Virus record (IMG/VR): IMGVR_UViG_3300043410_001471
Coordinates: 62,001-126,000 of that record
Direction: 5' to 3' (one strand)
DNA: 64,000 nt
A program made the translations under genes and the position numbers. How positions within the stretch are numbered: position 1 is the stretch's first letter; the number at the start of each line of letters is the position of its first letter. The notes beneath the pieces were generated by a model. That model saw only the letters and a program-made list of their open reading frames with translations, ran no database searches and was not told where the DNA came from. This document shows, in pieces, positions 16,054-56,972 of the stretch.

Positions 16054-16995
16054 GTGTTGAAAAGTACTGACAAAAATATCGTAGTATCTACGCTTTCTAA
16101 TGCGTTGGGTAGTTATTCCAATTTAAGGGGTAACGAATTAGCATTTTATTGTCCATTTTGTAATCACCACAAACAAAAACTACAAGTTAATACCGAAACT
16201 CAAAAATGGCATTGTTGGACTTGTAATAGTGGTGGTAAGAAATTGACTTCTTTATTAAAGAGATTAGATGTTGATAGAAAAACTATATCCATCATTAGAG
16301 AAATATATGGAGATTCCCATTATAATCCTCAAAACGAAGATGAAGGTACAAAAGTATTCATTCAGTTACCAAAAGAATTTATTTCATTGATAGATGAACC
16401 AAAAGGATTTAACCCAGAATACAAACACGCTATTCATTACTTAAATGAAAGAGGTATCACACAAAAAGATATTGTAAAATATAATATAGGTTATTGTAAA
16501 GATGGATTGTATGCCAGAAGGGTTATAATCCCATCATACACTTCAGATGGACAATTAAACTATTTTGTTTCTCGTTCATATTATGCTGAAGAGAAAATGA
16601 AATACAAAAACCCACCAATCAGTAAGAATGTAATATGTTTGGAATCTCAAGTTAATTGGAACGAACCAATTATTCTTTGTGAGGGTGTATTTGATGCGAT
16701 TACAATTAAAAGAAATGCTATTCCACTTTTAGGTAAGTTTCCATCCAAACAATTGGTTGAGAAAATCTTTATGAGTGGAGTTAGTGATATCATCATTTCA
16801 TTGGATAATGATGCAATCAATGAAGCATTAAAAGCAGCTGAATATTTTAGAAAAAATGGTATCCATGTAAAAATGATGTATCTTAAAGATAAAGATGCAG
16901 CTGATATGGGATACGAAAAGTTTTATGAAGAACTAAAGAAAACTAAAGAGTTTTCATCGGAAGAGTTATTATTAAATAAGATTATGAGTCTATGA
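16054..16995 (+). CDS. DNA primase (Zn-ribbon plus TOPRIM)
   Basis: CPFC..H...WHCWTC zinc finger; CEGVFDAI and SLDNDA TOPRIM motifs. The start is more likely GTG 16054 or TTG 16057 than the track's TTG 16036, which lies inside the promoter. Confidence 0.9.
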   Translation: MLKSTDKNIVVSTLSNALGSYSNLRGNELAFYCPFCNHHKQKLQVNTETQKWHCWTCNSGGKKLTSLLKRLDVDRKTISIIREIYGDSHYNPQNEDEGTKVFIQLPKEFISLIDEPKGFNPEYKHAIHYLNERGITQKDIVKYNIGYCKDGLYARRVIIPSYTSDGQLNYFVSRSYYAEEKMKYKNPPISKNVICLESQVNWNEPIILCEGVFDAITIKRNAIPLLGKFPSKQLVEKIFMSGVSDIIISLDNDAINEALKAAEYFRKNGIHVKMMYLKDKDAADMGYEKFYEELKKTKEFSSEELLLNKIMSL

Positions 16996-19900
16996 GTTTA
17001 AAAAAGATTTACCACATCGCAGACGTCCATATTCGTAATGTTAAAAGGCATACTGAATATAGGCAAGTATTTGAAAAGATGTTTGAGGAAATCCGTAAAA
17101 GAGGTACGGAAGATTCAATCATTTATTTAGCAGGAGATATTGCTCATGCTAAATTAGAACTTTCGCCTGAATTGGTTAGAGAGATTAGTTGGTTATTTAC
17201 GGAATGTTCTAAGCATTGTGAAACTATCCTTATTACGGGTAATCACGATTGTAATATGAACAATTCTGATAGATTGGATGTACTTACTCCAATTGTAGAA
17301 GCCTTAAATCTACCAAACTTTACATATTTGAGAGATACGCAAGTTTATTCCATTGGTGGAGTAGATTTCGGTGTATTCAGTATTTTTGATGATAAATCAA
17401 ATTGGCCTAAAGCAGAAACTTTAAGTGGAAACAAAAAGATTGCTTTATTTCACGGACCAGTTGATAACTCACAAACCGATATTGGATATGTAGTATCTTC
17501 TCGTCATTTCACAACCGAAATGTTTGATGGATATGATTTAGCCTTATTAGGTGATATCCATAAAAGACAAGAGATGATTTCTCCAAAAGGATGTAAAGTA
17601 GTTTATGCCGGTTCATTGGTTCAACAAAACTTTGGTGAAACTTTGGATAAGCACGGATTCCTTGTTTGGGATTTAGATACTTTAACTTATGAAGCAATTG
17701 ATATTCCAAATGATTATGGATATTACACTATGGATATTGATAATGGAAAAGTTCCTATTGTAAGTGATATGCCAAAGAAACCTCGTTTGAGAGTTCGCTT
17801 ATCTAATACCGATTCTGCTGATACTAAAAGAGTAATGGCTGAAATTAAGATGAGATATGGTGTTGAGGATTTCACAATTATCAGAACTGATTCATTGGCT
17901 AAATCAAAGACAGGTAATCGATTAAACAAATTAGATTTTGAAGATATTACGGATGTAAACTATCAGAACTCACTTATCAATGAATATGTTGAGAGAATGA
18001 TGCCTTTCGTAGCAAAGGAAGATTTAGATAAATTACAAACAATCAATAGAGATATAAATAGTAGAATTGTAAATGAAGATGTTCAAAGAAATATTCAATG
18101 GAAACCAATTAAGTTTGAGTTTTCAAATATGTTTAGTTATGGAGAGGATAACAAAATTGATTTCACAAAGTTAGGTGGATTAATGGGATTATTTGCACCA
18201 AACGCAACGGGTAAATCATCCTTATTCGATTCAATTTCATTTTGTTTATACGATAAGAGTAGTAGAGCATTCAAAGCAGCTAACATTCTAAACAATCGTA
18301 AATCAGAATTCGCTTGTCATTTACACTTTCAAATCGATGGGTTAGATTATCACATCGAAAGAACTGCTAAGACAATTAACAAAGGTAAGAATGTTAAAGT
18401 TGATGTACAATTCTGGAGACAAGATGGTGATGAGAAAACATCTTTAAATGGAACGGAGAGAAGGGATACAAATCAAATTATCGAACAATATGTTGGTAAA
18501 TATGAGGATTTCGTATTAACCGCTTTATCTTTACAAGGTAACAATGCACTATTCATTGATAAATCTCAATCAGAAAGAAAGGATTTATTAGCACAATTTA
18601 TGGGATTAAATGTATTCGATAAATTGTATGAAACTGCAACCGAAGATATCAAAGAGGTATCCGTTTTAATTAAGAATTTTAAGAAAACCGATTTCACTAG
18701 TGAATTGGCTGATAAAGCAATTGAATTAAAGGATAAGAAGGTTGAATTAAAAGATTTAGAAAAAGAGTTGGGTAGATTGAATGGTGATTCTACCGATTTG
18801 AGTAATAGAATCGTTGGATTGAGTGCAGAACTTACTCCAATGGATGGTAATTTGGATTTAGATAGTTTAACTCAACAACAAAATAAAATTGGTAGAGATA
18901 TTTTACATATTCTTGCAGAAAAGAAAGCAAAGGTAGAAACTATTGAAACATATACAACTACTATTAATGAATTATCTGCATCTATGGAAGATAAAAAGAA
19001 ATTTTATCTTTCAGAAACGGAATACATTGATATCGATAAAGCAAATGAATCATATGTTCAAGCGGAAAAGGATTATAATGTAGCAAACAATATTTACTAT
19101 GTTGCTAAAAAACAATTGGAAGCAGCAGAAGAAAAGATTAAACATTTGGATTCACATCAATACGACCCTAATTGTAAATTTTGTTGTGATAATGTATTCG
19201 TAAAGGATGCGATGAAAGCAAAAGAAGATTTGCAATCATTGGAAGTTAATGTGGATGAAGCTATGAATGATGTGAGTGGTTTTTCTAATATTATGGGTAT
19301 GTTTGAAGATGCCAAATCTCAATATGATACTATGTTGGATTTGAGAGGTAAGTATAGTAAGGCAATTGTTATCAAAGAGAAAGCAGAAGCTGAATTAGAA
19401 GGATTGGATACTAAAGAAGAATTATTAGAACACCAATTGGAAGTAGTTAAGGGTAACATTCAAAAATATCACGATAATGAAGCAACTATTAAAAAGAATG
19501 CACAAATTAACGAAGCGATTGTTGGATTAAAAAGAACTAAATCAGAAATTGAAGAAGAGATTAAGAAAGTTACAAAGGATATAGCCGGTGTAAATGGTTC
19601 TATTTCTTCCATATCTTCGTTTATAGAGGGGATAAAGAGTAGGATGGATGAAGTTAAGGATTTAGAAGAAAAAAACCGATTATACACCTATTATTTAGAT
19701 GCAGTTAAGAGAGATGGTATTCCTTATGAGTTGATTTCCAAAGCATTGCCAGTAATTGAAAATGAAATAAATAATATTCTTTCACAAGTTGTTGATTTTG
19801 GAATTGTAATGGAAGTGGATGGTAAATCAATTAATGCAAAAATCGTTTACGATGACCAAGAATGGCCATTGGAAATGTGTAGTGGTATGGAGAAATTTGT

Positions 19901-20150
19901 AAGTGGATTAGCAATCAGAGTTGCACTTATTAATGTATGTAATTTACCTCGTCCAAACTTCTTAGTAATTGATGAAGGATTTGGTACATTAGATAGCGAT
20001 AATTTATCATCTTTATTTATGATGATGCAGTATCTTAAAACTCAATTTGATTTCATTTGGATGATTTCTCACTTAGATGCAATGAGAGATATCGTAGATG
20101 GATTAATAGAAATTAAAAAAGAAAATGGATTTAGTAAGATTGACTTCTAA
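16992..20150 (+). CDS. Fused Mre11/SbcD (gp47-like) nuclease and Rad50/SbcC (gp46-like) ATPase
   Basis: Phosphoesterase motifs HIADVH, GDIAH, GNHD, FHG, GDIH, YAGS; Walker A APNATGKSS; Zn-hook CKFC; signature CSGMEKF; Walker B VIDEGFG; H-loop ISH. Confidence 0.93.
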   Translation: MSLKKIYHIADVHIRNVKRHTEYRQVFEKMFEEIRKRGTEDSIIYLAGDIAHAKLELSPELVREISWLFTECSKHCETILITGNHDCNMNNSDRLDVLTPIVEALNLPNFTYLRDTQVYSIGGVDFGVFSIFDDKSNWPKAETLSGNKKIALFHGPVDNSQTDIGYVVSSRHFTTEMFDGYDLALLGDIHKRQEMISPKGCKVVYAGSLVQQNFGETLDKHGFLVWDLDTLTYEAIDIPNDYGYYTMDIDNGKVPIVSDMPKKPRLRVRLSNTDSADTKRVMAEIKMRYGVEDFTIIRTDSLAKSKTGNRLNKLDFEDITDVNYQNSLINEYVERMMPFVAKEDLDKLQTINRDINSRIVNEDVQRNIQWKPIKFEFSNMFSYGEDNKIDFTKLGGLMGLFAPNATGKSSLFDSISFCLYDKSSRAFKAANILNNRKSEFACHLHFQIDGLDYHIERTAKTINKGKNVKVDVQFWRQDGDEKTSLNGTERRDTNQIIEQYVGKYEDFVLTALSLQGNNALFIDKSQSERKDLLAQFMGLNVFDKLYETATEDIKEVSVLIKNFKKTDFTSELADKAIELKDKKVELKDLEKELGRLNGDSTDLSNRIVGLSAELTPMDGNLDLDSLTQQQNKIGRDILHILAEKKAKVETIETYTTTINELSASMEDKKKFYLSETEYIDIDKANESYVQAEKDYNVANNIYYVAKKQLEAAEEKIKHLDSHQYDPNCKFCCDNVFVKDAMKAKEDLQSLEVNVDEAMNDVSGFSNIMGMFEDAKSQYDTMLDLRGKYSKAIVIKEKAEAELEGLDTKEELLEHQLEVVKGNIQKYHDNEATIKKNAQINEAIVGLKRTKSEIEEEIKKVTKDIAGVNGSISSISSFIEGIKSRMDEVKDLEEKNRLYTYYLDAVKRDGIPYELISKALPVIENEINNILSQVVDFGIVMEVDGKSINAKIVYDDQEWPLEMCSGMEKFVSGLAIRVALINVCNLPRPNFLVIDEGFGTLDSDNLSSLFMMMQYLKTQFDFIWMISHLDAMRDIVDGLIEIKKENGFSKIDF

Positions 20151-32301: not shown

Positions 32302-33702
32302 ATGGCATATAAAAAACCACTTTACGAAGAAGTAAAGAATACATTGGATAATGTTGGTAAAGGAATGTGTTTGGCAAAATGGACACAGGTTACAACTCAC
32401 TTACATACGGGTCACAACCATTCTTGTCACCACCCTAATACACATAAAGTTTCCGAACAAGAAATTAAACGAAACCCATCGGCACTTCATAATACTTTGT
32501 TTAAAAAGCAGAGAAGAAAAGAAATGATGAATGGAGCTAGACCTACCGAATGTGATTATTGTTGGGGAGTTGAGGATAATTCGGATTTATATTCGGATAG
32601 AGTTTTTAAATCATCCGAAGATTGGAGTTGGCCATTGGCAGACCAAATCATTAATTCAAATTGGAGAGATGACTTTAACCCACGTTATGTAGAAGTTGCA
32701 TTCTCAAATGCTTGTAATTTCGCATGTTCATATTGTTCACCAACCTTTTCAACAAAATGGATGGAAGAAATACAACAATATGGAGCATATAATACTACCG
32801 ATAGTTTCAATGATTTAAAACATTTGGCAGCTGAACAAAAAATGCCAATACCATTAAGAGAACATAATCCATATGTTGAAGCATTTTGGAAGTGGTGGCC
32901 TGATTTATATAGAGATTTGCATACATTCCGTATTACAGGTGGTGAACCATTGATGCATAAAGATACTTGGAAGGTATTGGATTATATTATAGATGAACCA
33001 AACCCAAATAAGAATTTAGATTTCTCTATTAACTCTAATTTAGGTGTACCTGATGAATTAATCACCAAATTGATTGAAAAATTAAAAAGAATTACGGAAG
33101 AAGATAAGGTAAAGGGATTTGTACTATTTACATCTTGTGATGGATGGGGTGAACAAGCCGAATATATTCGTAATGGTTTGGAATTTAATCGTTTTTGGAA
33201 CAATGTGAATAGAATTTTGAGAGAAGTTCCTAGAATTACTATAACATTTATGGTAACATATAATATGTTATCAGTATTTAGTTTTGATAAATTAATTAAA
33301 GGTGTTTATGATTTAAAAAGAGAATATGCCGGGGATGATAGATATTGGTTATCACCCGTATTATTGGATACATCGTATTTAAGACACCCAAGACATCAAA
33401 CTGTTCAAATACTTCCACATCAATTTAAGCAAAACATATTTGACCAAGCTCAATTAGCATTTTATTATGGAATTCCATACTATTCAAAGGGATATGTTGG
33501 GTATTCTGACTTGGAAATTCAAAAATTAAAGAGAACATATGATTGGGCAATATCACCAATAGATAATGGTGAATTATTCAAAGCAAGATATAACTTTTAT
33601 CAGTTCTTTAGTGAGCATGATAAGAGAAGGGGAACTGATTTTTGTAAAACATTCCCAGAATTAGAAGAATTTTATCACTTTACAAAAGAAATTAAGTTAT
33701 AA
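32302..33702 (+). CDS. Radical SAM protein with N-terminal Twitch-like Fe-S domain
   Basis: CxxxCxxC (NACNFACSYC), ITGGEP, N-terminal CLAKW...HSCHH...C.YCW..E. Confidence 0.85.
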   Translation: MAYKKPLYEEVKNTLDNVGKGMCLAKWTQVTTHLHTGHNHSCHHPNTHKVSEQEIKRNPSALHNTLFKKQRRKEMMNGARPTECDYCWGVEDNSDLYSDRVFKSSEDWSWPLADQIINSNWRDDFNPRYVEVAFSNACNFACSYCSPTFSTKWMEEIQQYGAYNTTDSFNDLKHLAAEQKMPIPLREHNPYVEAFWKWWPDLYRDLHTFRITGGEPLMHKDTWKVLDYIIDEPNPNKNLDFSINSNLGVPDELITKLIEKLKRITEEDKVKGFVLFTSCDGWGEQAEYIRNGLEFNRFWNNVNRILREVPRITITFMVTYNMLSVFSFDKLIKGVYDLKREYAGDDRYWLSPVLLDTSYLRHPRHQTVQILPHQFKQNIFDQAQLAFYYGIPYYSKGYVGYSDLEIQKLKRTYDWAISPIDNGELFKARYNFYQFFSEHDKRRGTDFCKTFPELEEFYHFTKEIKL

Positions 33703-46502: not shown

Positions 46503-48110
46503 ATGCAACAACCATTTAAAATATACACATTAGAATCAAATGACCAAAAGGTTTTAAAGAAAGTTTTGGAATCGTCTGTTAATATCGAAAATATACGAGC
46601 TTCATCAGAAGGAGTTGGTAATAGAAGTTATGAACTTCCAACCGATATGGTGAAAACATTGGAAAATTGTGAATTAGAAAAAACCAATATCATATCAAAT
46701 GATTCTAAATTAAGTCAAATTTGGTATACATTAAATAAGCCTGAAAATAAGATAGAAGTTGAAAAAATGTTAGAAAAGCATTTTAAACAATTATATCCCA
46801 ATATAACTTATCCTTTGGAAATTTTATGGAATGTTACAATGTATACAGAGGGGTGTTTTATTGAAGAACATATAGATGGTAGAGATGCCGATAGAATGGC
46901 TGGATTTTTATTTTATTTAAATGAAAGTTATGATAGTGATAATGGTGGTCTATTAAGAGTTATAGACCCAAATACAAATGAAATAACAAATATTGTTCCG
47001 GAATTCGGACAAGCAATATGTATAGATTATATAAACAATGAGGTATCACACGAAGTGACACCTGTTAAACAAGGAAAAAGATTAGCAATTTGCGCATTCA
47101 TTCATAAAAGAAATCATATGGGAAAAAGTTACAAAATTTTAGTTACTGGAGCAAGTGGATTTATAGGTTCACAATTGGTTAAAAGTTTAAAAGAAAGAGG
47201 ATATTGGAATTTACGAACAACTTCATTTAGTAGAGACTTACCAAATACAATCAAAGATAAGGAATCAATTGAACATTTTAAAGGAGATTTACAAGATGCA
47301 AACTTTTGTAAGGAAGTTTCCGAAGGTGTAGATGTAGTATTTCATTGTGCAGCAAATACATCAAACGCATTAGATACAAAACAAAATCCTTTATTACATG
47401 TTACTCCAAATGTAGAAATGAATGTAAATTTGATGGAACAAAGTTGGAGAAATGGAGTTAAGAAGTTTATGTTTATTTCATCTAATACTGTATACCCAGA
47501 TATGAAGGACGCATTTTGTACCGAAGATATAAATATCCATGCAACTCCTACATTTCCAATATATGGGGCGGTTGGTAATATGAAAAGATATGGTGAATTA
47601 CTTTGTGAATATTTTTCAAAACAAATCCATAATCCAATGCAATGTGTAATTATTAGACCATCAAATGCATTTGGACCAAATGATAAATTTGATTTCGAAA
47701 AGTGTCATGTTACACCTGCAAACATTCGTAAAGTTGCAGATGGTTTAAATCCAATTCCGGTATGGGGTGATGGTAGTGAGGTAAGAGATTTACTTCATGT
47801 TGAAGATATGGCGGATGGTATGATATTTTTAGCAGAAATGGTAGATAAATATTCTATTTACAATGTTTGTTATGGAGAAGGATTTAGTGTAAATGAAGTA
47901 TTAGGATGGATTAAAGAAGCTGATAATAATGATAATCCTGTCGAATATGTAAATAATAAAGCTCCAATGATTCCTGTTAGATTAATGTCATCTAAAAAAA
48001 TAAATGAGTTGGGGTGGAAACCAAAAAGAGATTTAAAGCAAGCTCTTAAAGAAACATTGGAATGGTATAAAGAACATAAACACTTATATAATCCAAACTC
48101 AAAACCATAA
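46503..48110 (+). CDS. In-frame fusion of a 2OG-Fe(II) oxygenase and a GDP-fucose-synthase-like SDR
   Basis: N-half EHIDG, FLFYLN, GGLL, HEV, R; C-half (from Met at 47118) TGASGFIG, FISSNTVY, VGNMK in place of YxxxK, RPSNAFG, WGDGSEVRD. Confidence 0.85.
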   Translation: MQQPFKIYTLESNDQKVLKKVLESSVNIENIRASSEGVGNRSYELPTDMVKTLENCELEKTNIISNDSKLSQIWYTLNKPENKIEVEKMLEKHFKQLYPNITYPLEILWNVTMYTEGCFIEEHIDGRDADRMAGFLFYLNESYDSDNGGLLRVIDPNTNEITNIVPEFGQAICIDYINNEVSHEVTPVKQGKRLAICAFIHKRNHMGKSYKILVTGASGFIGSQLVKSLKERGYWNLRTTSFSRDLPNTIKDKESIEHFKGDLQDANFCKEVSEGVDVVFHCAANTSNALDTKQNPLLHVTPNVEMNVNLMEQSWRNGVKKFMFISSNTVYPDMKDAFCTEDINIHATPTFPIYGAVGNMKRYGELLCEYFSKQIHNPMQCVIIRPSNAFGPNDKFDFEKCHVTPANIRKVADGLNPIPVWGDGSEVRDLLHVEDMADGMIFLAEMVDKYSIYNVCYGEGFSVNEVLGWIKEADNNDNPVEYVNNKAPMIPVRLMSSKKINELGWKPKRDLKQALKETLEWYKEHKHLYNPNSKP

Positions 48111-48829
48111 TGGATAGTATATTATTTTCAGGTTGTTCTTACACATATGGAGAGGGATTGTGGAGAGAAACAGGTGATACACATCAAAATTCTGAAAATC
48201 AAAAATATCTTTTAGAAAATAGATGGACAACAAAAGTTTCAAATCATTTTAATCTCAATCAAATTTCAAAAGGGTACAATGGTGGAAGTAACATTGGTTC
48301 TATTAAATTTGTAAGAGAAGAATTTGATGCAACTACTTGGAATGGGAATGATATTAAATTGATATTATTTCAAACTACGCAATTCAATAGACACAAATTT
48401 AGTATAGATGAACAAATATCCGAATTAGAAAAATTTGTAAAAGAATTTGAAAATAAAAATATACCTGTAAGATTTATACATTGGCAATGGGTTGATATAA
48501 CGGATGAAGAGATGGAAATATTCTTAAATAGAAAGCATGATTTTTTAGGAAAATTAAATCCATCATTTTTTCCAGATAAAACAATTCCACCATATGATGG
48601 TAATAAATTAACTTCTAAAATAATAAGAGATAGAACAATCAGAATTTTAGATAAATTTAATTTTCACGAAATGGTGTATCATAACGATGCACATAAAAAA
48701 GGAACATTATCTAACAAATATACATTGGCTGGAAAATTAAGATGTGAAGATTTCCATATGAATCAAGAAGGGCATGATATTTTAACAAATGAAATAATTA
48801 ATTATATAGAAAAAAATAAGTTATTATGA
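48110..48829 (+). CDS. SGNH-like protein (paralog 5 of 5)
   Basis: FSGCSYTYG, GGSNIGS, DFHMNQEGH. Confidence 0.65.
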   Translation: MDSILFSGCSYTYGEGLWRETGDTHQNSENQKYLLENRWTTKVSNHFNLNQISKGYNGGSNIGSIKFVREEFDATTWNGNDIKLILFQTTQFNRHKFSIDEQISELEKFVKEFENKNIPVRFIHWQWVDITDEEMEIFLNRKHDFLGKLNPSFFPDKTIPPYDGNKLTSKIIRDRTIRILDKFNFHEMVYHNDAHKKGTLSNKYTLAGKLRCEDFHMNQEGHDILTNEIINYIEKNKLL

Positions 48830-49365
48830 ATACACCTCAATATTCTCCTTACAAAGATGCACTAACAAATGCTATGACTGAATTAGCAAAATTAGATGAT
48901 AGTATCTTTATTGGACAACAAATAGTTTATGCTGGAAATCCTATGTCTACAACATTAGGAGAAGTTCCAAAAGAAAAAATGATTGAAGTTCCTGTTATGG
49001 AAGAAACTCAAATGGGAATGAGTTTAGGATTGGCAATGACTGGTAAACGAGTAATAACATTTTATCCTCGTTGGGATTTTATTATTTCAGCAACCAATCA
49101 ATTAGTAAATCATTTGGATAAGTTTGAAATAATGACTGGTAAAAAGCCAAATGTAATAATTCGTTTAGGTAAAGGTTCTGATAAACCATTAGACCCTGGT
49201 CATCAACATAAAGGAAATTATTTTGAAGAGTTTAAATCTTTATGCAAGAACATAGAATTTCACGATTTAAAAACTCCTTCGGATATCGAATCGGCATATA
49301 AATATGCTACAAAAGAAGGTGGTGTGCATTTATTAGTAGAATACCCCGAATTATATTATAGTTAA
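48826..49365 (+). CDS. TPP-dependent enzyme, E1-beta/transketolase pyrimidine-binding subunit (no C-terminal domain)
   Basis: FIGQ...IE.PV.EETQMG...GLAM.G, NQLVNHLDK, GHQH; only 179 aa. Confidence 0.85.
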   Translation: MNTPQYSPYKDALTNAMTELAKLDDSIFIGQQIVYAGNPMSTTLGEVPKEKMIEVPVMEETQMGMSLGLAMTGKRVITFYPRWDFIISATNQLVNHLDKFEIMTGKKPNVIIRLGKGSDKPLDPGHQHKGNYFEEFKSLCKNIEFHDLKTPSDIESAYKYATKEGGVHLLVEYPELYYS

Positions 49366-49994
49366 TGAAAGAATTGATATTAGAAAATGGTAAAGTCGTT
49401 TATGATGAGATATACGATGGTGGTGGTAGCTCTTTTGGTGTAAATGCACTTAGAGATGAGAGAGTAAAATCCGTAATAAAAAGAGGAAACATATTGGAAA
49501 TGTGTTCTGGTCCAGGCTTTATGGGGTTTTTTTTAAATTTTGAAGGATTTGCAGATTATTTGGTTTTATCTGATATAAATGATGTACATGAATCATACAT
49601 TAGAGAAACTATTCTACAAAATAATTTGATGAATACTAAATTCATTCAATCAGATGGATTTAAATCATTCTATATACATAATGTGTTTGATACGATTGTT
49701 ATGAATGCACCACATTATGCATCTCCTAGAAATGGAGGATATGTTAGTAAAGAGGAAGAACTTATTTGTTTAGACCAAGATTTAGAATTCCACAAACATT
49801 TTTTTAAAACGGCAAAAAATTATTTAAAAAAAGATGGAGTTATCATATTAATTGGTAATATGGGCGGAATCCAACCACAAGAAATAATTGATATGGCTGG
49901 CGATGAATATTTATGTAATCTAATAGCATGTGAAAGATATGGTTGGATTAGAGATTCTAGGTTTTATGTTTTAGAAATAAAAGTAAATGGGTAG
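49365..49994 (+). CDS. Class I SAM methyltransferase (HemK/PrmC-like, probable N-methyltransferase)
   Basis: LEMCSGPG motif I, SDIN, SDGF, IVMNAPHY (NPPY-like motif IV). Confidence 0.8.
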   Translation: MKELILENGKVVYDEIYDGGGSSFGVNALRDERVKSVIKRGNILEMCSGPGFMGFFLNFEGFADYLVLSDINDVHESYIRETILQNNLMNTKFIQSDGFKSFYIHNVFDTIVMNAPHYASPRNGGYVSKEEELICLDQDLEFHKHFFKTAKNYLKKDGVIILIGNMGGIQPQEIIDMAGDEYLCNLIACERYGWIRDSRFYVLEIKVNG

Positions 49995-51568: not shown

Positions 51569-54500
51569 ATGAATTTAAGCGAAGTAGATAAACCAGAAGT
51601 TAAAAAGACCATAGTAGTATATTCAGGTCGTTTTCAACCATTTCACAAAGGGCATTATGTTTCTTATTTAAAACTTTGTAGTAAGTTTGGTAAGAATAAT
51701 GTCTATATTGGTACATCTAATGATACTTCCGGTCCAAAATCTCCATTTAACTTTAACGAAAAAGTTAAAATAATGAACACTATGTTCGGTATTCCATCGG
51801 ACAAGATAGTTCAGGTGAAAAATCCATATGCTCCAAAAGAAATTTTACAACAATTTGATGGTAAAACAACTCAATACATTGCAGCAGTTGGAGAAAAGGA
51901 TGCAAATAGATTACAAGGTAAATATTTTAAGCCATATAAAGGTAAAGCTGGATATGGTTACGATGAAATTGGTTATGTTTATCCCGTTCCTGCTGAAACT
52001 AACGCAATTAGTGGAACTGATGTTCGAAGTTGGTTAGGTAGTGATAGTAAAGATAAAGAAAAAGGATTTTTAAAAGCATATCCAAAATTTGATAAAGAAA
52101 TTTTTAAAATGATAACAGGTAAATTAAACGAATCGGTAAATACAAATCCATCATATACGATGAGGCCAGAACCACATCCAACTAGACATGAAACGGAACA
52201 CCCAACCGATGAACCTGATTGGCATAAAAAGGATGAACCATATGACCCTATTTCGGAATTAATAGGTAAAACTATGATGGAAGAAATGTTTCAAGACTTT
52301 TTAAGAGAATATTTGGATGAAGAATCCGAAGCTCAGAAAATGGGATTGATACACTTAGGTGGTGGGTATTATGGTAAGGAGCAAGGTAAACCAGCTACTC
52401 ATAAATCGGAAGATGGTAAAATTAGAGCATTAACACCCGCTGAAGTAGCTGCGGAAAAGCAAAAACAAATGGCTAAAGGTCCTTCGGATGCACCTGCAAA
52501 CGAACCTAAACCATCTCAACCAGGTCAACCTGTTAATAAAGGAGCAACTGCTCAAGGTAAAGTTGATAAAGCAAAGGAAGAACCAACTAATAAAAAAGTA
52601 GGTGGAGAACAGCCTGGTCAACAAGCGCCTCCGCCTGAACAAAAGTTAAGTGGAGCAGAATTGAAATCATCTGCCGAAATGTCTCCAGATGAAAAGAAAC
52701 AAGCCGAAGTAAAAGAAAAATTACATCATGCAATGGCTGATTTATCAGATGATGATAAAAAAGTAGTAGATGATGTTAATAACCCGGATTCAGAAATGAG
52801 AAAGGGTTGGTATGAAAAATTAAATGATTGGACTGGAGATAAACTACATAAAGTTGGTAAAGCAGTTGGGCATGTAATTGCACATAAAGTAGACCAATAT
52901 AAAGAATTTGGTAAGGGTATGTACTCATTAGCAACTTCAGGTAAATTGGGTACAATTACAGATGAAGAAACTGGTAAAAAAGTACATTGGTCTGATTATA
53001 CACAGGGAGGTTCATCCAAAGAAGGATGGGGAGATAAAATGAAAGATGTGCCTGTTTATAAAAAAGATAGTCATGGACATCCTATACATGATGAAGAAGG
53101 TAATCCGGTTCAAGATAAAGATTGGAGGGGTAGACCTAAAACACAAAAAGAACCTGTATTTAGAGAAGATTTATCACCAAGAGAATTGGCATTAGCAAAG
53201 AAATCTTGGTATGAAAGAAATGAACAAATAAAAGGTTTAAAAGGAACTGCTATGGATGCCGCTCTTATTGCTGGTAGTATGATGACAGCAGGGGCTGCAA
53301 CTGGGGCATTAGCTGCAAAGGGTATCGGTACTACTGCAAATGTTGCATCGTATGCGGGGCAAACATTGGGACATGCAATTCAACATGGAGCTGTTCACTC
53401 ATTCACATCGGGGGCGAGTTATTTTGGAATTCACTTAGGAAAGGATATGGCTAAACACGTTGCAATTGAAGCAACGGGATTAGGTGCGATGGGAACAACT
53501 ACTGCTGGAACTGTTTTAAGTGTTGCAACGGGTGGTATTTTGGAAGGAATTGGTAATGATTCAAATCAGCCAAATCCACAAGATATGATGATGAACCTAA
53601 TAAAGAAAATAGGTGAAAGAATGCAAACATTTAAAATGAGTGATGAACAAATGTTGGCATCTATTGAATCATATAAAAAAAATAAACCAGAATCCGATTT
53701 AGCAAACGCTGCAAAGGATTTAATGAAAGAAGATTTATCAGATTCTAAAAAAGCAAATATACAACACTTTGTAGAATTTGCAACTAAGAGATTAAAACTA
53801 CAAGAAACTCCAAAAGTAACTTTGGTAGGTGGAAAAGAATATGGTAATGTAAAATCTTCATTAGGTGGATACAGCCCAGAAGATAAAACAATATATGTTG
53901 CAACTGAAGGTAGATTGACAGCAGATATCCTAAGAACTCTTGCGCATGAGATGGTTCATAGAAAGCAAGATGAGATGGGATACATCAAAGATTCGGTACA
54001 AGATGGTGCGGATGGTTCTCCAATAGAAAACCAAGCACATTCAATTGCTGGAATCTTAATGAGAGAATATGGTAGAATCAACAAACAAATTTACAACGAA
54101 GATGTTAATGTAGATGTTGATAAAGGTGATGAAGTTTTAATGGGTAAATTTAAAAACAAAAAAGTTACCGTTAAAGATATTGGAACTGATGACCATGGGA
54201 TGCCAACAATCAATGGTAAGCAAGCAACTACATTCAGAATTCCACGAGGTGAAAGTGTAAACGAAGTTGGTTCAAATGATTGGAGATTCAAAGCAATTAT
54301 GAAATTGTGGGATAAAGCATCTACATTTGGTAGAAAGAAAATTGCAGCAGCAGTTTGTAAAGACCCAAATGCGGATAGAAATGATGTTGCAAGAGAATTG
54401 AGAAGTTTTGGATATAGAGATATAACATCGGTTGGTGACCAATTAGGATTAGACGAAAAAAAAAATCTTAAAGAAAAATTATCACACTCCAATTTAGATA

Positions 54501-56257
54501 GTGTAGAGAAATATGCGGATAGAGAATTATCTCCTGCTGATATTGAATTTAGTAATCATTTCTTTGATAGATTAAATGACCCAAGAAATGGTAAAGAAAT
54601 TTCAGAACCAGAATTAACTGGGTTTTTCAAAAGATTAGCAAGACACAAAAAAGAATTTTTAGATTTTTTAGATAAGTACAATCAAATCGTAGTTAAAGAT
54701 ACGAGAAGTGATATCAATATCCCATTTGTAAAAATGGCAAATAAAGTTATCGCTAAGACTGTAATGAGAAAGGGCGAATTTCAAACATCATCTCATACAA
54801 TCGTAAATGAAGCACAGGCCGTTAGTGGTGGCAAGGTTCATAAATTCATTACTGGTAAAAATTTAGGATTCAAAGGTAAAAAGTATTCTGAAATTGAATT
54901 TGAAACATTAGGAATCGATAATAGAAATCAGACTGTTAGATTGAAAATTATAGCACCAAAAGAAATTGGTGGTAATGAAATGAGTTTAGATTTCAGAACA
55001 ATTAGAAGAGGTCCTTTTTTCAAAACCGATACTCATTCTCACTCAATACATGAAGGATTGATATTAGAAGGTGGTGCATACGGGCACATGTCACATCCAT
55101 TTGATGATATGGATTTAACTTTTGGTGATTTGAAAAAGATTATCAAAGGAGCATTGACGGGTAATTTAGAATTGACAAGAGAGAAAACTGATGGGCAAGC
55201 ATTGGCAATCAGTTGGAAGAATGGTAGATTAATTGCAGCAAGAAATAAATCACATTTAGCTAATGGTGGAGCCGGTGCAATGGGTATCGAAGATGTAGCA
55301 AATAAGTTTGGTGGTAGAGGTGGTTTAACCGATGCATACAATTTCGCAATGAAGGATTTGACAGCAGCAATCCAATCATTATCAGAAGCACAAAGAAAAA
55401 AGATATTTAACGAAGGACAATGTTTTATGAATTTGGAAGTAATATGGCCAACTTCAGTAAATGTTATTCCTTACGGACAGGCTTTATTAGTATTCCACAA
55501 TACAACTTGTTATGATGAAAAGGGTGTAGCAGTTGGAGCAAATCAGGGAGCAGCAACAATGTTAGCAGGAATGATTAAGCAAGTAAACGCTGATGTTCAA
55601 TCAAAGTATACAATACAAGGTCCACCTGTAACAGAACTACCTAAAAATGAGGAGTTAAGTTCGAAGCAAACAAAATACCTAACTCAATTACAAAAGATTC
55701 AATTTCAATTCCAATTATCCGATAAGGATGGTGTTTCTGAATATCATCAAGCATGGTGGGAAGATTTTGTGAACAAAGGTGGAGTTAAATTACAAAAATT
55801 AGAAAAGGAAGCATTAGTAAGAAGATGGGCATTTGGCGATAAATCATTTCGTTTAAACACTATCGCTGATAAAGATGCTCAAAAATGGGCAATCGATAAT
55901 GATAAAGTAAATGTAGCTAAACAACAAAAAGAAAATGTTAGACAATTTGAAGAAATATTTTTGGGGGTTGGTGCAGACGTTCTCTCATTTATGGGTTCAG
56001 TTTTAACAGCAAACCCAGATGCAGCAGTTCGTAATATGAAAGATAGATTAAAATCAACTGCGGAGAAAGTTAGAGGAAGTGGTGACCCATCTAAAATAGC
56101 TAAATTGAAAATGGAATTAAGTAGATTGGCTAGTATTGGTGGTAAAGACAAGATAGTTCCAAACGAAGGTATTGTATTTGTTTATAAAGGAAACACTTAC
56201 AAACTTACAGGTACATTCGCACCATTAAATCAAATTTTAGGTATATTTTACGAATAA
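51569..56257 (+). CDS. Multidomain protein: HxGH nucleotidyltransferase, low-complexity/hydrophobic region, HExxH zincin, small domains, and C-terminal ligase-like KxDG domain (DUF6267-like)
   Basis: GRFQPFHKGH (51644-55); RTLAHEMVH (53945-59); GGAYGHMSHPFD, EKTDG (55181-95), ARNK, NLEVI, EGIVF, YKLTG at the C-terminus. Confidence 0.75.
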   Translation: MNLSEVDKPEVKKTIVVYSGRFQPFHKGHYVSYLKLCSKFGKNNVYIGTSNDTSGPKSPFNFNEKVKIMNTMFGIPSDKIVQVKNPYAPKEILQQFDGKTTQYIAAVGEKDANRLQGKYFKPYKGKAGYGYDEIGYVYPVPAETNAISGTDVRSWLGSDSKDKEKGFLKAYPKFDKEIFKMITGKLNESVNTNPSYTMRPEPHPTRHETEHPTDEPDWHKKDEPYDPISELIGKTMMEEMFQDFLREYLDEESEAQKMGLIHLGGGYYGKEQGKPATHKSEDGKIRALTPAEVAAEKQKQMAKGPSDAPANEPKPSQPGQPVNKGATAQGKVDKAKEEPTNKKVGGEQPGQQAPPPEQKLSGAELKSSAEMSPDEKKQAEVKEKLHHAMADLSDDDKKVVDDVNNPDSEMRKGWYEKLNDWTGDKLHKVGKAVGHVIAHKVDQYKEFGKGMYSLATSGKLGTITDEETGKKVHWSDYTQGGSSKEGWGDKMKDVPVYKKDSHGHPIHDEEGNPVQDKDWRGRPKTQKEPVFREDLSPRELALAKKSWYERNEQIKGLKGTAMDAALIAGSMMTAGAATGALAAKGIGTTANVASYAGQTLGHAIQHGAVHSFTSGASYFGIHLGKDMAKHVAIEATGLGAMGTTTAGTVLSVATGGILEGIGNDSNQPNPQDMMMNLIKKIGERMQTFKMSDEQMLASIESYKKNKPESDLANAAKDLMKEDLSDSKKANIQHFVEFATKRLKLQETPKVTLVGGKEYGNVKSSLGGYSPEDKTIYVATEGRLTADILRTLAHEMVHRKQDEMGYIKDSVQDGADGSPIENQAHSIAGILMREYGRINKQIYNEDVNVDVDKGDEVLMGKFKNKKVTVKDIGTDDHGMPTINGKQATTFRIPRGESVNEVGSNDWRFKAIMKLWDKASTFGRKKIAAAVCKDPNADRNDVARELRSFGYRDITSVGDQLGLDEKKNLKEKLSHSNLDSVEKYADRELSPADIEFSNHFFDRLNDPRNGKEISEPELTGFFKRLARHKKEFLDFLDKYNQIVVKDTRSDINIPFVKMANKVIAKTVMRKGEFQTSSHTIVNEAQAVSGGKVHKFITGKNLGFKGKKYSEIEFETLGIDNRNQTVRLKIIAPKEIGGNEMSLDFRTIRRGPFFKTDTHSHSIHEGLILEGGAYGHMSHPFDDMDLTFGDLKKIIKGALTGNLELTREKTDGQALAISWKNGRLIAARNKSHLANGGAGAMGIEDVANKFGGRGGLTDAYNFAMKDLTAAIQSLSEAQRKKIFNEGQCFMNLEVIWPTSVNVIPYGQALLVFHNTTCYDEKGVAVGANQGAATMLAGMIKQVNADVQSKYTIQGPPVTELPKNEELSSKQTKYLTQLQKIQFQFQLSDKDGVSEYHQAWWEDFVNKGGVKLQKLEKEALVRRWAFGDKSFRLNTIADKDAQKWAIDNDKVNVAKQQKENVRQFEEIFLGVGADVLSFMGSVLTANPDAAVRNMKDRLKSTAEKVRGSGDPSKIAKLKMELSRLASIGGKDKIVPNEGIVFVYKGNTYKLTGTFAPLNQILGIFYE

Positions 56258-56303: not shown

Positions 56304-56972
56304 ATGGTAAAAAGAACAAGTTTTGAACAAAAAAATAAACACATTCACAAATCTCGTAAACTAATTATCGATACGGTATTTGGTAGAACCGATGATAATC
56401 AAAATGTGTTTGGTTATGAAAAAGAAGCAGAACAAAAAAGAGAAGTAGGTGAGAAGTGGGTTGATAAAGATGGTAAGGAGTGGGAACAAAAAGAAGGATT
56501 TAAAATCAACACTACTAAAATGGATGAGGTTAGAGAATATCTAAAAAAGATAACAACTTGCTCATCCGATGATTGTAAAACAATTCAATATAGTACTGCT
56601 GATAAGAAGTTAATTGCTAAAACGGGGTTATGTACAACTTGTTTGGCAAAGCAAGAAAGTATATTGAGAGGTGATGGAACTTGGCCTTTTTATGAAGATT
56701 ATAAAATAACTTTAAACAAGTTAGATTATGTTAGAGATGTTAAAGCACAATTAGAAGAGGCTTTAGAAGGTGTCAAGCAGCAAGTTGAAATGATTAATGA
56801 AGATGGTACTATAAGCAAATGGCAATGGGATATTGATATTCAAAAAGTAAAATCTGATTTAAAAAATGATATTGCTGGAGCTTACAACGCAATTGAAGAA
56901 TTGTTAGAGCGTAAGTTGGCATTAGAAAATAAGTTACAGGAATTAAATCATTCAGAATTAATAAAAAACTAA
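56304..56972 (+). CDS. Hypothetical protein with Cys cluster and coiled coil, upstream of terminase
   Basis: CSSDDC...CTTC; C-terminal heptads. A small-terminase role is possible but unsupported. Confidence 0.55.
   Translation: MVKRTSFEQKNKHIHKSRKLIIDTVFGRTDDNQNVFGYEKEAEQKREVGEKWVDKDGKEWEQKEGFKINTTKMDEVREYLKKITTCSSDDCKTIQYSTADKKLIAKTGLCTTCLAKQESILRGDGTWPFYEDYKITLNKLDYVRDVKAQLEEALEGVKQQVEMINEDGTISKWQWDIDIQKVKSDLKNDIAGAYNAIEELLERKLALENKLQELNHSELIKN

What the first reader, a model, noticed from the sequence alone, without database searches (positions are those of the whole stretch)
51569..56257. HxGH nucleotidyltransferase coupled to a KxDG ligase-fold domain: an uncharacterised two-enzyme nucleotide system
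Seen: an N-terminal RFQPFHKGH domain (NMNAT/PPAT/cytidylyltransferase superfamily) and a C-terminal domain (from 55070) with EKTDG, an ARNK motif, NLEV, EGIVF and YKLTG, the motif order of covalent-lysine nucleotidyltransferases (ligases and capping enzymes). Inference: the pair may make and use an activated nucleotide, for example NAD restoration, RNA repair/capping or protein nucleotidylation against host defence.
Basis: inference. Interest (0 to 1): 0.6.

Follow-up and report, generated by a model that had tools for sequence, protein, structure and literature searches.

The report
Phage nucleotidyltransferase–RNA ligase fusion protein
One 1562-residue gene of an uncultivated 245-kb T4-like phage joins an NMN-adenylyltransferase-like enzyme to a very divergent RNA-ligase-like enzyme, a pairing conserved across a large uncharacterised phage family that most likely repairs RNA cut by host defences.

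Summary
ORF 51569-56257 (+) is one 1562-aa protein. Its N-terminus has GRFQPFHKGH and ISGTDVR and folds like NMN/NaMN adenylyltransferases. Its last 413 aa carry EKTDG, ARNK, NLEV, EGIVF and YKLTG; K, D, G, R, G, F and the last K are invariant in 52 relatives, and the E residues of NLEV and EGIVF are near-invariant. The model of this domain (pLDDT 91) matches only ATP-dependent RNA ligases at the top of the list (Z 8-9).

This is a 'polyvalent' phage protein.

The ligase-like domain defines a family of at least 1848 clusters at 50% identity. 103 of 150 representatives also carry the NT domain, in either order. Some relatives insert P-loop kinase, HD, 2H and CCA-adding domains. One relative has an intein exactly between the K and TDG of motif I.

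The gene sits just upstream of the terminase-portal module in 80 related loci.

Best reading: an RNA-repair ligase with an NMNAT-like partner whose acceptor substrate is unknown. Enzymatic coupling of the two is inferred, not shown. A sister family (Pfam DUF6267, fused to a cytidylyltransferase-like domain) is a T4-like cyanophage gene.

The parts
51569..56257 (+). Whole ORF, 1562 aa (P0001): a modular 'polyvalent' phage protein
   Evidence: a single open frame under table 11
51593..52192 (+). N-terminal HIGH-superfamily nucleotidyltransferase domain, NMNAT-like (aa 9-208). HxGH at nt 51641-51655; ISGTDVR at nt 52007-52027
   Evidence: Pfam PF01467 E 8e-5. PHROG 395 E 8e-13. Family profile vs PDB: MJ0541 NMNAT E 3.4e-9. 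Model pLDDT 91. Foldseek top hits are NadM, archaeal NMNAT, NadD and PPAT at E about 1e-6
52193..53233 (+). K/E/G/P-rich low-complexity linker (aa 209-555)
   Evidence: Composition. Shared only with the closest relatives
53234..53563 (+). Gly/Ala-rich, weakly hydrophobic segment (aa 556-665); not a clear transmembrane helix
   Evidence: Kyte-Doolittle maximum 1.42. Present in 12/150 representatives
53666..54148 (+). HExxH metallopeptidase-like module (aa 700-860); HEMVH at nt 53945-53959
   Evidence: H793, E794 and H797 are invariant in 18 sequences. No significant PDB or Pfam match. One relative hits SprT-like
54134..54268 (+). Small, apparently beta-rich module by sequence (no fold was predicted), about 45 aa (aa 856-900); recurs in 50/150 representatives; distinct from DUF5661
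54446..54838 (+). RegB/BECR-like putative RNase module (aa 960-1090), with an invariant HFFDR...RN...K-T..R set
   Evidence: phrog_23027 E 3e-9. Pfam REGB_T4 E 0.04. Conservation. hhalign vs T4 RegB not significant. Present in 23/150 representatives
55016..56254 (+). C-terminal RNA-ligase-like covalent nucleotidyltransferase domain (aa 1150-1562). Motif I EKTDG nt 55181-55195 (K1206). Motif Ia ARNK nt 55238-55249. Motif III NLEV nt 55430-55441. Motif IIIa LVFH nt 55487-55498. Helical insert about aa 1355-1525. Motif IV EGIVF nt 56165-56179. Motif V YKLTG nt 56198-56212. Conserved upstream GHMSHPFD nt 55082-55105
   Evidence: Alignment A1. Model pLDDT 91, pTM 0.86. Foldseek: the top 50 hits are all ligases. 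VIA-align: the top 11 are RNA ligases, Z 7.2-8.9 over 181-205 aligned residues. Intein inside motif I in relative P0249
56304..56972 (+). Conserved downstream neighbour (P0271, 222 aa; CxxxxC...CxxC plus a coiled coil). Possibly the small terminase. Not shown to belong to the system
   Evidence: Conserved next to the gene in Mel-JY01, LR756508 and L005 and in 79 of 80 IMG/VR loci. No family match

Best explanation
The ORF encodes a modular phage protein with two conserved catalytic ends and variable cargo between them.

The C-terminal domain is a very divergent ATP-dependent RNA-ligase-type enzyme. The inferred mechanism has three steps:
1. K1206 in EKTDG attacks the alpha-phosphate of ATP, giving a Lys-AMP adduct.
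2. AMP passes to a 5'-phosphate RNA end.
3. The 3'-OH end attacks and seals the break.

Its job is most likely to reseal tRNA or other RNA cut by host ribonuclease defences. This would be equivalent to T4 Rnl1.

The N-terminal domain is an NMNAT-like HIGH nucleotidyltransferase. It transfers AMP from ATP to a phosphorylated acceptor. NMN, giving NAD+, is the nearest precedent, but the acceptor pocket is not conserved with NMNATs. Its link to the ligase domain is evolutionary (persistent fusion), and enzymatic coupling is an inference.

The HExxH module may cut the polyprotein into its parts. The protein may be made late and carried in the virion, because the gene always lies directly upstream of the terminase-portal module.

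Shown: the motifs, their conservation, both folds, the architecture statistics and the synteny. Inferred: every catalytic activity, the substrates, processing and packaging.
For: Fold:
- The C-domain model (pLDDT 91) matches NgrRnl (Z 8.9), REL1 (8.8), Trl1 (8.5/8.3), T4 Rnl1 (8.2) and T4 Rnl2 (8.1). DNA ligases score 5.6-7.3 and capping enzymes 5.3-5.4.
- All 50 top Foldseek rows are ligases.

Motifs:
- Motifs I, Ia, III, IIIa, IV and V are present in order and are invariant or nearly so.
- The protein ends 14 aa after motif V, so there is no OB domain.
- Two of 52 family members weakly hit Pfam RNA_ligase.
- Relative P0249 has an intein between the K and the TDG of motif I. Inteins favour catalytic motifs (established knowledge).

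Partner domains in relatives:
- P0169 reads NT, RegB-like, DUF5661, AAA_33 kinase, HD, CCA-adding enzyme, ligase-like.
- Across 120 inter-domain segments the census found PolyA_pol/CCA 5, AAA_33 5, Zeta-type kinase 5, HD 4 and 2H 1.
- 13 of 150 representatives carry such modules. These are the classic partners of RNA ligases in RNA repair (PMC7824862).

N-terminal domain.

Coupling:
- 103/150 representatives carry both domains; 97 have NT first and 5 have the ligase-like domain first.
- 49 of 52 complete IMG/VR loci are fused.
- The sister family DUF6267 is also fused to the NT domain in S-PM2.

Context: the order NT..LIG, P0271-like, TerL, portal holds in 80 loci. A cytidylyltransferase was found in a cyanophage virion proteome (PMC10665884).
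Against: - No significant sequence match to any named RNA ligase family. P0001 has no Pfam or NCBIfam hit in the C-domain. hhalign vs T4 Rnl1 and Rnl2 gave E 0.12 and 0.04.
- Z scores of 8-9 are only moderately above the tool's stated background. Residue-level superposition of K1206 on a ligase lysine could not be done.
- P0001 itself carries no kinase or phosphatase for end healing. The genome has only two unassigned AAA_33-like ORFs elsewhere, and no CCA-adding enzyme or Tpt1.
- RNA repair has no known need for an NMNAT-like enzyme, so the most conserved feature of the family, the NT partner, is not explained.
- A putative RNase (the RegB-like module) in the same chain is odd for a repair protein.
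- The virion-proteome hit in S-CREM2 is a separate 340-aa NT protein, not a fusion.
Confidence: 0.5

Rival explanations
1. Nucleotide relay. The NT domain makes NAD+ or another AMP-containing dinucleotide. The ligase-like domain is charged from that compound, as LigA is charged from NAD+, and releases NMN that the NT domain recycles. Alternatively, the pair builds a cap-like 5' end (NAD- or App-RNA).
For: The fusion persists in both domain orders and across two sister families. The NT domain is nearest to NMNAT. A Nudix gene lies two genes from a stand-alone ligase-like gene in L006.
Against: No LigA-type NMN-binding domain is present, and NAD-dependent ligases are not among the listed structural matches. 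The NMN-binding middle region of NMNATs does not align. NCBIfam NMNAT scores are far below the cut-offs. Complex prediction gave no verdict. The relay offers no obvious energetic gain over direct use of ATP.
Confidence: 0.12
2. The two ends are independent effectors that travel together by descent. The NT domain supplies NAD+ against NAD-depleting defences. The ligase-like domain acts separately. There is no enzymatic coupling.
For: The protein has a polyvalent architecture: disparate modules shuffled between the ends, plus an HExxH module that could release them (PMC5512222). Phage NMNATs are known counter-defence enzymes (NARP2: 10.1101/2024.02.11.579819; NARP3: PMC13464706). In S-CREM2 the NT and DUF6267 genes are unlinked.
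Against: Known NAD+ pathways pair the NMNAT with an NMN source (Nampt, or RNK plus PnuC). This genome has no NAPRTase-family gene and no Nudix. Chance co-travel does not easily explain re-fusion in the opposite order.
Confidence: 0.2
3. The C-domain is the phage's DNA ligase. It would seal nicks or Okazaki fragments, or act on the incoming genome.
For: The 245-kb genome has no ATP- or NAD-dependent DNA ligase detectable with Pfam models. The S-PM2 homologue lies in the replication module beside the DNA polymerase, UvsX, the primase-helicase and MazG.
Against: RNA ligases outrank DNA ligases in both structure searches. There is no OB domain. The co-fused domains are RNA-directed: CCA-adding enzyme, 2H and the RegB-like module.
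Confidence: 0.13
4. A mainly morphogenetic role, like the second function of T4 Rnl1 (gp63) in tail-fibre attachment, with catalysis secondary.
For: T4 rnlA is annotated as an RNA ligase and tail-fibre attachment catalyst. The gene lies among late genes, between the tail-fibre/baseplate genes and the terminase-portal module.
Against: The catalytic motifs are invariant. An intein sits in motif I. Catalytic partner domains are fused in relatives.
Confidence: 0.05

Closest known systems
ATP-dependent RNA ligases (T4 Rnl1, fungal Trl1 ligase domain, T4 Rnl2/REL1, Naegleria NgrRnl)
   Same: Same nucleotidyltransferase fold (Z 8-9, 181-205 aligned residues). Motifs I, Ia, III, IIIa, IV and V occur in the same order with conserved K, R, E, E and K. 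No OB domain. Associated in relatives with a kinase, phosphoesterases and a CCA-adding enzyme.
   Different: No significant sequence similarity. A helical insert of about 170 aa lies between motifs IIIa and IV, rather than a domain appended at the C-terminus. There is a conserved GHMxHPFD element upstream of motif I. The domain cannot be assigned to any Rnl clade because the scores are tied. It has a near-obligate NMNAT-like partner.
Archaeal/NadM-type NMN adenylyltransferase
   Same: GRFQPFHKGH and SGTxxR motifs, and a Rossmann-like HIGH fold.
   Different: Only about 55 N-terminal residues plus the SGTxxR piece align. The region that binds NMN in NMNATs, as I recall it (from memory, not checked here), is unrelated in sequence. 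Scores are 26 bits against cut-offs of 127-181. In about 28% of family members HxGH reads GxHH.
Pfam DUF6267 fused to CTP_transf_like (T4-like cyanophage 'cytitidyltransferase', e.g. S-PM2 p138/p139, T4-like GC 190)
   Same: An uncharacterised phage domain with a similar predicted structure (Atlas TM 0.64-0.69; BFVD S-PM2 E 4e-6). It is fused to an NT domain that our NT profile detects (E 1e-9).
   Different: The DUF6267 HMM does not match this genome. The domain order is reversed in S-PM2, where the gene lies in the replication module rather than beside the terminase.
Polyvalent proteins of phages and conjugative elements (Iyer et al. 2017, PMC5512222)
   Same: Many unrelated catalytic modules in one chain, an HExxH peptidase-like module, a BECR/RegB-like module, a portal-terminase-type phage, and module shuffling among relatives.
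   Different: A text search of that paper found no NMNAT, adenylyltransferase or cytidylyltransferase domain. 'RNA ligase' appears only where the authors note that 2H domains were never associated with RNA ligases. Here two fixed 'bookend' domains bracket the variable cargo. Packaging into the virion is untested.
Phage NAD+ reconstitution pathways NARP2 and NARP3
   Same: They contain a phage NMNAT-type adenylyltransferase (10.1101/2024.02.11.579819; PMC13464706).
   Different: Their partners (Nampt, or a PnuC transporter plus an RNK domain) are absent. Here the partner is a ligase-like domain.

Membership tests
Covalent nucleotidyltransferases: ATP-dependent RNA ligases | Motif I KxDG with a nucleophilic lysine | tested here: met
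   EKTDG at aa 1205-1209. K, D and G are invariant in 52 sequences. An intein splits K|TDG in P0249.
Covalent nucleotidyltransferases: ATP-dependent RNA ligases | Motifs Ia, III, IIIa, IV and V in order | tested here: met
   ARNK, NLEV, LVFH, EGIVF and YKLTG are conserved and lie on the expected strands of the model. Equivalence was judged from order and secondary structure, not from residue-level superposition.
Covalent nucleotidyltransferases: ATP-dependent RNA ligases | Nucleotidyltransferase fold | tested here: met
   VIA-align: the top 11 hits are RNA ligases, Z 7.2-8.9. Foldseek: the top 50 are all ligases, but none has E<1e-3 and TM is 0.2-0.27.
Covalent nucleotidyltransferases: ATP-dependent RNA ligases | Significant sequence match to a curated RNA ligase family | tested here: not met
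   No Pfam or NCBIfam hit for P0001. 2/52 relatives hit PF09414 at E 0.003. hhalign was not significant.
Covalent nucleotidyltransferases: ATP-dependent RNA ligases | Lys-AMP formation and strand joining | not testable with these tools
   Needs biochemistry.
DNA ligases / mRNA capping enzymes | OB-fold domain after motif V | tested here: not met
   The chain ends 14 aa after YKLTG. The model shows only one short helix there.
NMN adenylyltransferase (archaeal/NadM type) | HxGH and ISxTxxR ATP-binding motifs on a HIGH Rossmann-like fold | tested here: met
NMN adenylyltransferase (archaeal/NadM type) | Score above the curated family cut-off; conserved NMN-binding region | tested here: not met
   26-27 bits against cut-offs of 127-181. 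The profile aligns only to the N-terminal 55 aa and the SGTxxR piece.
Pfam DUF6267 (PF19782) | Match to the family HMM | tested here: not met
   No match in the whole genome at E<=1. The same model finds S-PM2 and S-CREM2 at E 1e-64. Structural kinship only.
Polyvalent proteins (PMC5512222) | Several disparate catalytic domains in one polypeptide of a portal-terminase phage | tested here: met
   NT, HExxH, RegB-like and ligase-like modules. TerL and a T4-type portal lie downstream.
Polyvalent proteins (PMC5512222) | Zincin-like MPTase domain | tested here: inconclusive
   HExxH and a downstream E are invariant. No significant profile match to a solved zincin.
Polyvalent proteins (PMC5512222) | Packaged in the virion and injected | not testable with these tools
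   Only indirect evidence: the gene's position beside the packaging genes and a cytidylyltransferase in the S-CREM2 virion proteome (PMC10665884).
NARP2-type NAD+ reconstitution | Nampt partner encoded by the phage | tested here: not met
   PF04095 is absent from the 245-kb genome while the control genomes gave hits.
T4-type tRNA repair (Pnkp plus Rnl) | 5'-kinase and 3'-phosphoesterase alongside the ligase | tested here: inconclusive
   Absent from P0001. Present inside relatives. The genome has two AAA_33-like ORFs of unknown role.

The most novel reading that the evidence does not exclude
The NMNAT-like and ligase-like domains form an obligate two-step nucleotide relay acting on nucleic-acid ends. 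Either the ligase is charged from a dinucleotide made on the spot, or the pair adds NAD- or App-type caps to RNA after transcription. Phages would deliver this as part of an injected polyprotein. That would be a new class of end-modifying or repair chemistry, present in thousands of uncultivated phages and in T4-like cyanophages.
Probability: 0.12. Interest if true: 0.8.

Novelty: new variant of a known kind. Interest (0 to 1): 0.6.

Why it matters
The ligase-like domain defines a very large phage family: at least 1848 clusters at 50% identity and 548 IMG/VR stretches. It is almost absent from cultured phages (3 of 50,697 records) and has no name. Its nearest Pfam relative is a DUF found in T4-like cyanophages.

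If it is an RNA ligase, RNA repair is far more widespread in aquatic phages than ligase annotations suggest. Its near-obligate NMNAT-like partner also points to a step in RNA repair or NAD metabolism that no known pathway accounts for.

The architecture of two fixed ends with swappable cargo (kinase, HD, CCA-adding enzyme, RNase-like and peptidase-like modules) gives a natural catalogue of functions that phages use together. The intein in motif I independently marks the active site.

Tried and rejected
- blastn of the ORF against 50,697 phage records: no match.
- phmmer and a family profile of the C-domain against PDB sequences: only low-complexity eS6 hits, rejected.
- hhalign of the family profile against T4 Rnl1 and Rnl2: not significant, although motif I and, for Rnl1, motif III fall in register.
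- DUF6267 HMM on the genome: no match.
- Complex prediction with the NT and ligase-like domains as two chains: score 0.00, 'no answer'. This is no evidence either way.
- Profiles of the HExxH module and the RegB-like module against PDB: nothing significant. RegB-like profile against T4 RegB: E 0.32.
- T4 late-promoter motif TATAAATA: 22 sites against 22.6 expected, and none usefully placed upstream.
- tRNA genes in the window: none.
- Gly/Ala-rich segment as a transmembrane helix: hydropathy too weak to say.
- The apparently stand-alone 424-aa ligase-like protein P0172 is a contig-cut fragment of a fusion.
- The alignment-based scan of genome contigs failed for lack of a conserved block. The single-protein scan gave one locus.
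- Burroughs and Aravind 2016 (RNA repair systems) is not held, so I could not check whether the family is described there.

Full report
**Observation.**
- The window is bases 62001-126000 of a 245,436-bp IMG/VR virus record with direct terminal repeats. It has about 30% G+C, and the long ORFs lie almost entirely on the + strand.
- ORF 51569-56257 (+) is one uninterrupted frame of 1562 aa, P0001.

**N-terminal domain.**
- Pfam finds CTP_transf_like (aa 17-153, E 8e-5, above its cut-off). PHROGs finds 'cytidyltransferase' (E 8e-13).
- NCBIfam's best models are archaeal and NadM-type NMN adenylyltransferases. They match only the first ~55 residues, at 26-27 bits against cut-offs of 127-181.
- A 58-sequence family profile (A2) reaches M. 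jannaschii NMNAT at E 3.4e-9. It aligns GRFQPFHKGH...PF and, separately, the SGTxxR piece. The middle of the domain does not align.
- The model (pLDDT 91) matches NadM, archaeal NMNAT, NadD and PPAT at E about 1e-6 and TM 0.5-0.6.
- H29, K110, R114 and R153 are invariant. In about 28% of members HxGH reads GxHH.
- Conclusion: a probably active HIGH-superfamily adenylyl/cytidylyltransferase. NMNAT is its nearest relative, but its acceptor substrate is not established.

**C-terminal domain.**
- No family library names it.
- An exhaustive search of 1.84 billion representatives finds 1848 clusters at E<=1e-3 and 566 at E<=1e-30. The domain lies at or near the C-terminus of nearly all listed proteins, which range from about 280 to 1930 aa.
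- The word-based search found more than 1606 proteins. IMG/VR holds at least 548 stretches. Only 3 of 50,697 phage records carry it: Microcystis phage Mel-JY01 and two uncultured huge phages.
- In a 52-sequence alignment, K1206, D1208, G1209, R1225, G1534, F1537 and K1545 are invariant. E1205, N1226, K1227, E1290, H1310 and E1533 are at least 90% conserved. So is an upstream G-G-x-x-G-H-x-x-H element.
- The model is confident (pLDDT 91, pTM 0.86).
- Foldseek against the PDB returns only ligases in its top 50 (T4 Rnl1 first, E 2e-3). None passes E 1e-3, and TM scores are low.
- The Foldseek-independent search ranks eleven ATP-dependent RNA ligases first: NgrRnl Z 8.9, REL1 8.8, Trl1 8.5 and 8.3, T4 Rnl1 8.2, T4 Rnl2 8.1. 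Each has 181-205 aligned residues spanning model residues ~19-409. DNA ligases score 5.6-7.3 and capping enzymes 5.3-5.4.
- The match therefore bridges a helical insert of about 170 residues between motif IIIa and motif IV. This explains the low TM scores.
- The chain ends 14 residues after motif V, so there is no OB domain.
- Sequence-level links to known ligases are not significant.
- Independent support for motif I as an active site comes from relative P0249. An intein (Pfam Hint/Intein_splicing) sits exactly between ...AQEK and TDGQN.... Inteins characteristically occupy catalytic motifs (established knowledge).

- a K/E/G/P-rich linker;
- a Gly/Ala-rich, weakly hydrophobic segment;
- a module with invariant HExxH and a downstream Glu, which has no significant structural-sequence match;
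- a ~45-aa module that recurs in 50/150 representatives and is distinct from DUF5661;
- a module with an invariant HFFDR...RN...K-T..R set. It hits phrog_23027 (E 3e-9) and, weakly, T4 RegB (Pfam E 0.04; hhalign not significant).
This matches the 'polyvalent protein' pattern of Iyer et al. (PMC5512222). A text search of that paper found no NMNAT-type or RNA-ligase domain among its modules.

**Are the two ends linked?**
- Among 150 representatives, 103 carry the NT domain. 97 have the NT domain first, 5 have the ligase-like domain first and 47 have the ligase-like domain only.
- Many 'ligase-only' entries are contig-cut fragments, for example P0172.
- In 80 IMG/VR loci, 52 have a complete 5' end. 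Of these, 49 are fusions (774-1945 aa, median 1162), one has a separate NT ORF upstream and two have none.
- Mel-JY01 carries a direct 639-aa fusion. In LR756500 the gene after a stand-alone ligase-like ORF contains NT-like pieces.
- A more distant structural relative, Pfam DUF6267, is also fused to CTP_transf_like. In Synechococcus phage S-PM2, DUF6267 (p138 plus the start of p139, 'Cytitidyltransferase', T4-like GC 190) is followed by an NT domain that our profile detects at E 1e-9.
- The association is old and has formed in both orders. A physical interaction could not be assessed.

**What the family does.**
- The variable cargo is informative. P0169 reads NT, RegB-like, DUF5661, AAA_33 P-loop kinase, HD, CCA-adding enzyme (PolyA_pol plus its RNA-binding domain), ligase-like.
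- Across 120 inter-domain segments the recurrent Pfam families are DUF5661 (15), PolyA_pol (5), AAA_33 (5), Zeta-type kinase (5), HD (4), ROS/MucR (3) and 2H (1). 13 of 150 representatives carry at least one of these healing modules.
- Kinase, phosphoesterase and nucleotide-adding enzymes are the standard companions of ATP-dependent RNA ligases in phage RNA repair (PMC7824862). In T4, Rnl1 works with PseT to repair tRNA in prr hosts (annotation).
- This makes RNA, probably tRNA, the most likely substrate.
- The window's own protein has no healing module. The genome has two AAA_33-like ORFs elsewhere but no CCA-adding enzyme or Tpt1.
- It also lacks any recognisable DNA ligase, NAPRTase/Nampt and Nudix.
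- The role of the NMNAT-like partner remains the unexplained core of the family.

**Context.**
- Upstream lie a 2OG-oxygenase/epimerase fusion, a transketolase-like protein and a methyltransferase. Further upstream are baseplate, tail-fibre and SbcCD-like genes.
- Downstream, the order is P0271-like, (a 215-aa ORF), TerL, a 186-aa ORF, then a T4-type portal. This order holds in essentially all 80 related loci, and partly in Mel-JY01, LR756508 and L005.
- P0271 has a Zn-ribbon-like CxxxxC...CxxC and a coiled coil. It may simply be the small terminase.
- A cytidylyltransferase was detected in the S-CREM2 virion proteome (PMC10665884). That protein is a separate 340-aa NT protein, and S-CREM2's DUF6267 gene lies elsewhere. 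Virion delivery therefore remains a hypothesis.

**Verdict.** The 'make and use an activated nucleotide' idea is neither supported nor excluded. I class this as a new variant of a known kind: a distinct, unnamed clade of RNA-ligase-like enzymes with a fixed NMNAT-like partner, embedded in polyvalent proteins.

**Limits.**
- No residue-level superposition was possible, and there is no biochemistry.
- One relevant review could not be read.

Noticed in passing
window 56304-56972 (+), P0271: This 222-aa protein has CxxxxC...CxxC and a C-terminal coiled coil. It lies directly downstream of the NT..ligase gene in 79 of 80 related IMG/VR loci, and also in Mel-JY01, LR756508 and L005. It has no family match. 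It could be the small terminase or a partner of the system.
   Followed up: partly
P0249 aa 737-878 (relative); also double ligase-domain hits in L025, L026, L027, L029 and L037: An intein is inserted exactly between the Lys and TDG of motif I of the ligase-like domain. Several related loci show the domain split into two hits and may carry the same insertion.
   Followed up: partly
window 46503-49994 (+): A cluster resembling sugar-nucleotide or modification enzymes: a 2OG-Fe(II) oxygenase fused to an NAD-dependent epimerase/dehydratase (46503-48110), a transketolase pyrimidine-binding-like protein (48826-49365) and a methyltransferase (49365-49994). Parts of the cluster recur upstream of the gene in several related loci.
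   Followed up: partly
window 7228-12207 (+): A 1659-aa ORF with a TTG start has no PHROG match at E<=1e-5.
   Followed up: no
window 16992-20150 (+): A single 1052-aa ORF combines SbcD-like (N-terminal) and SbcC-like (C-terminal) nuclease subunits, which are usually two genes.
   Followed up: no
window 32302-33702 (+): A radical-SAM-domain protein (466 aa) lies in a run of ORFs, most of which have not been assigned to any family.
   Followed up: no
L103 (SHWS01000026.1, 10-kb contig of a Lake Baikal Pelagibacteraceae MAG): This is the only hit in 185,579 species genomes (68% identity in the ligase-like domain). It is probably a phage contig binned with a low-GC SAR11-type genome. Together with the window's ~30% G+C, it hints at a Pelagibacterales-like host.
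   Followed up: no
L006 586-4752: A stand-alone ligase-like gene is followed by a Nudix gene and, further on, a ribosomal protein S21 gene on a phage-like contig.
   Followed up: no
NT domain, alignment A2 positions 26-29: About 28% of family members have G-x-H-H in place of H-x-G-H in the signature motif, while the last His stays invariant.
   Followed up: partly
G000 1692-2012 and 237023-237463 (outside the window): Two AAA_33 P-loop kinase-like ORFs lie elsewhere in the genome. They are possible polynucleotide kinases but were not examined.
   Followed up: no
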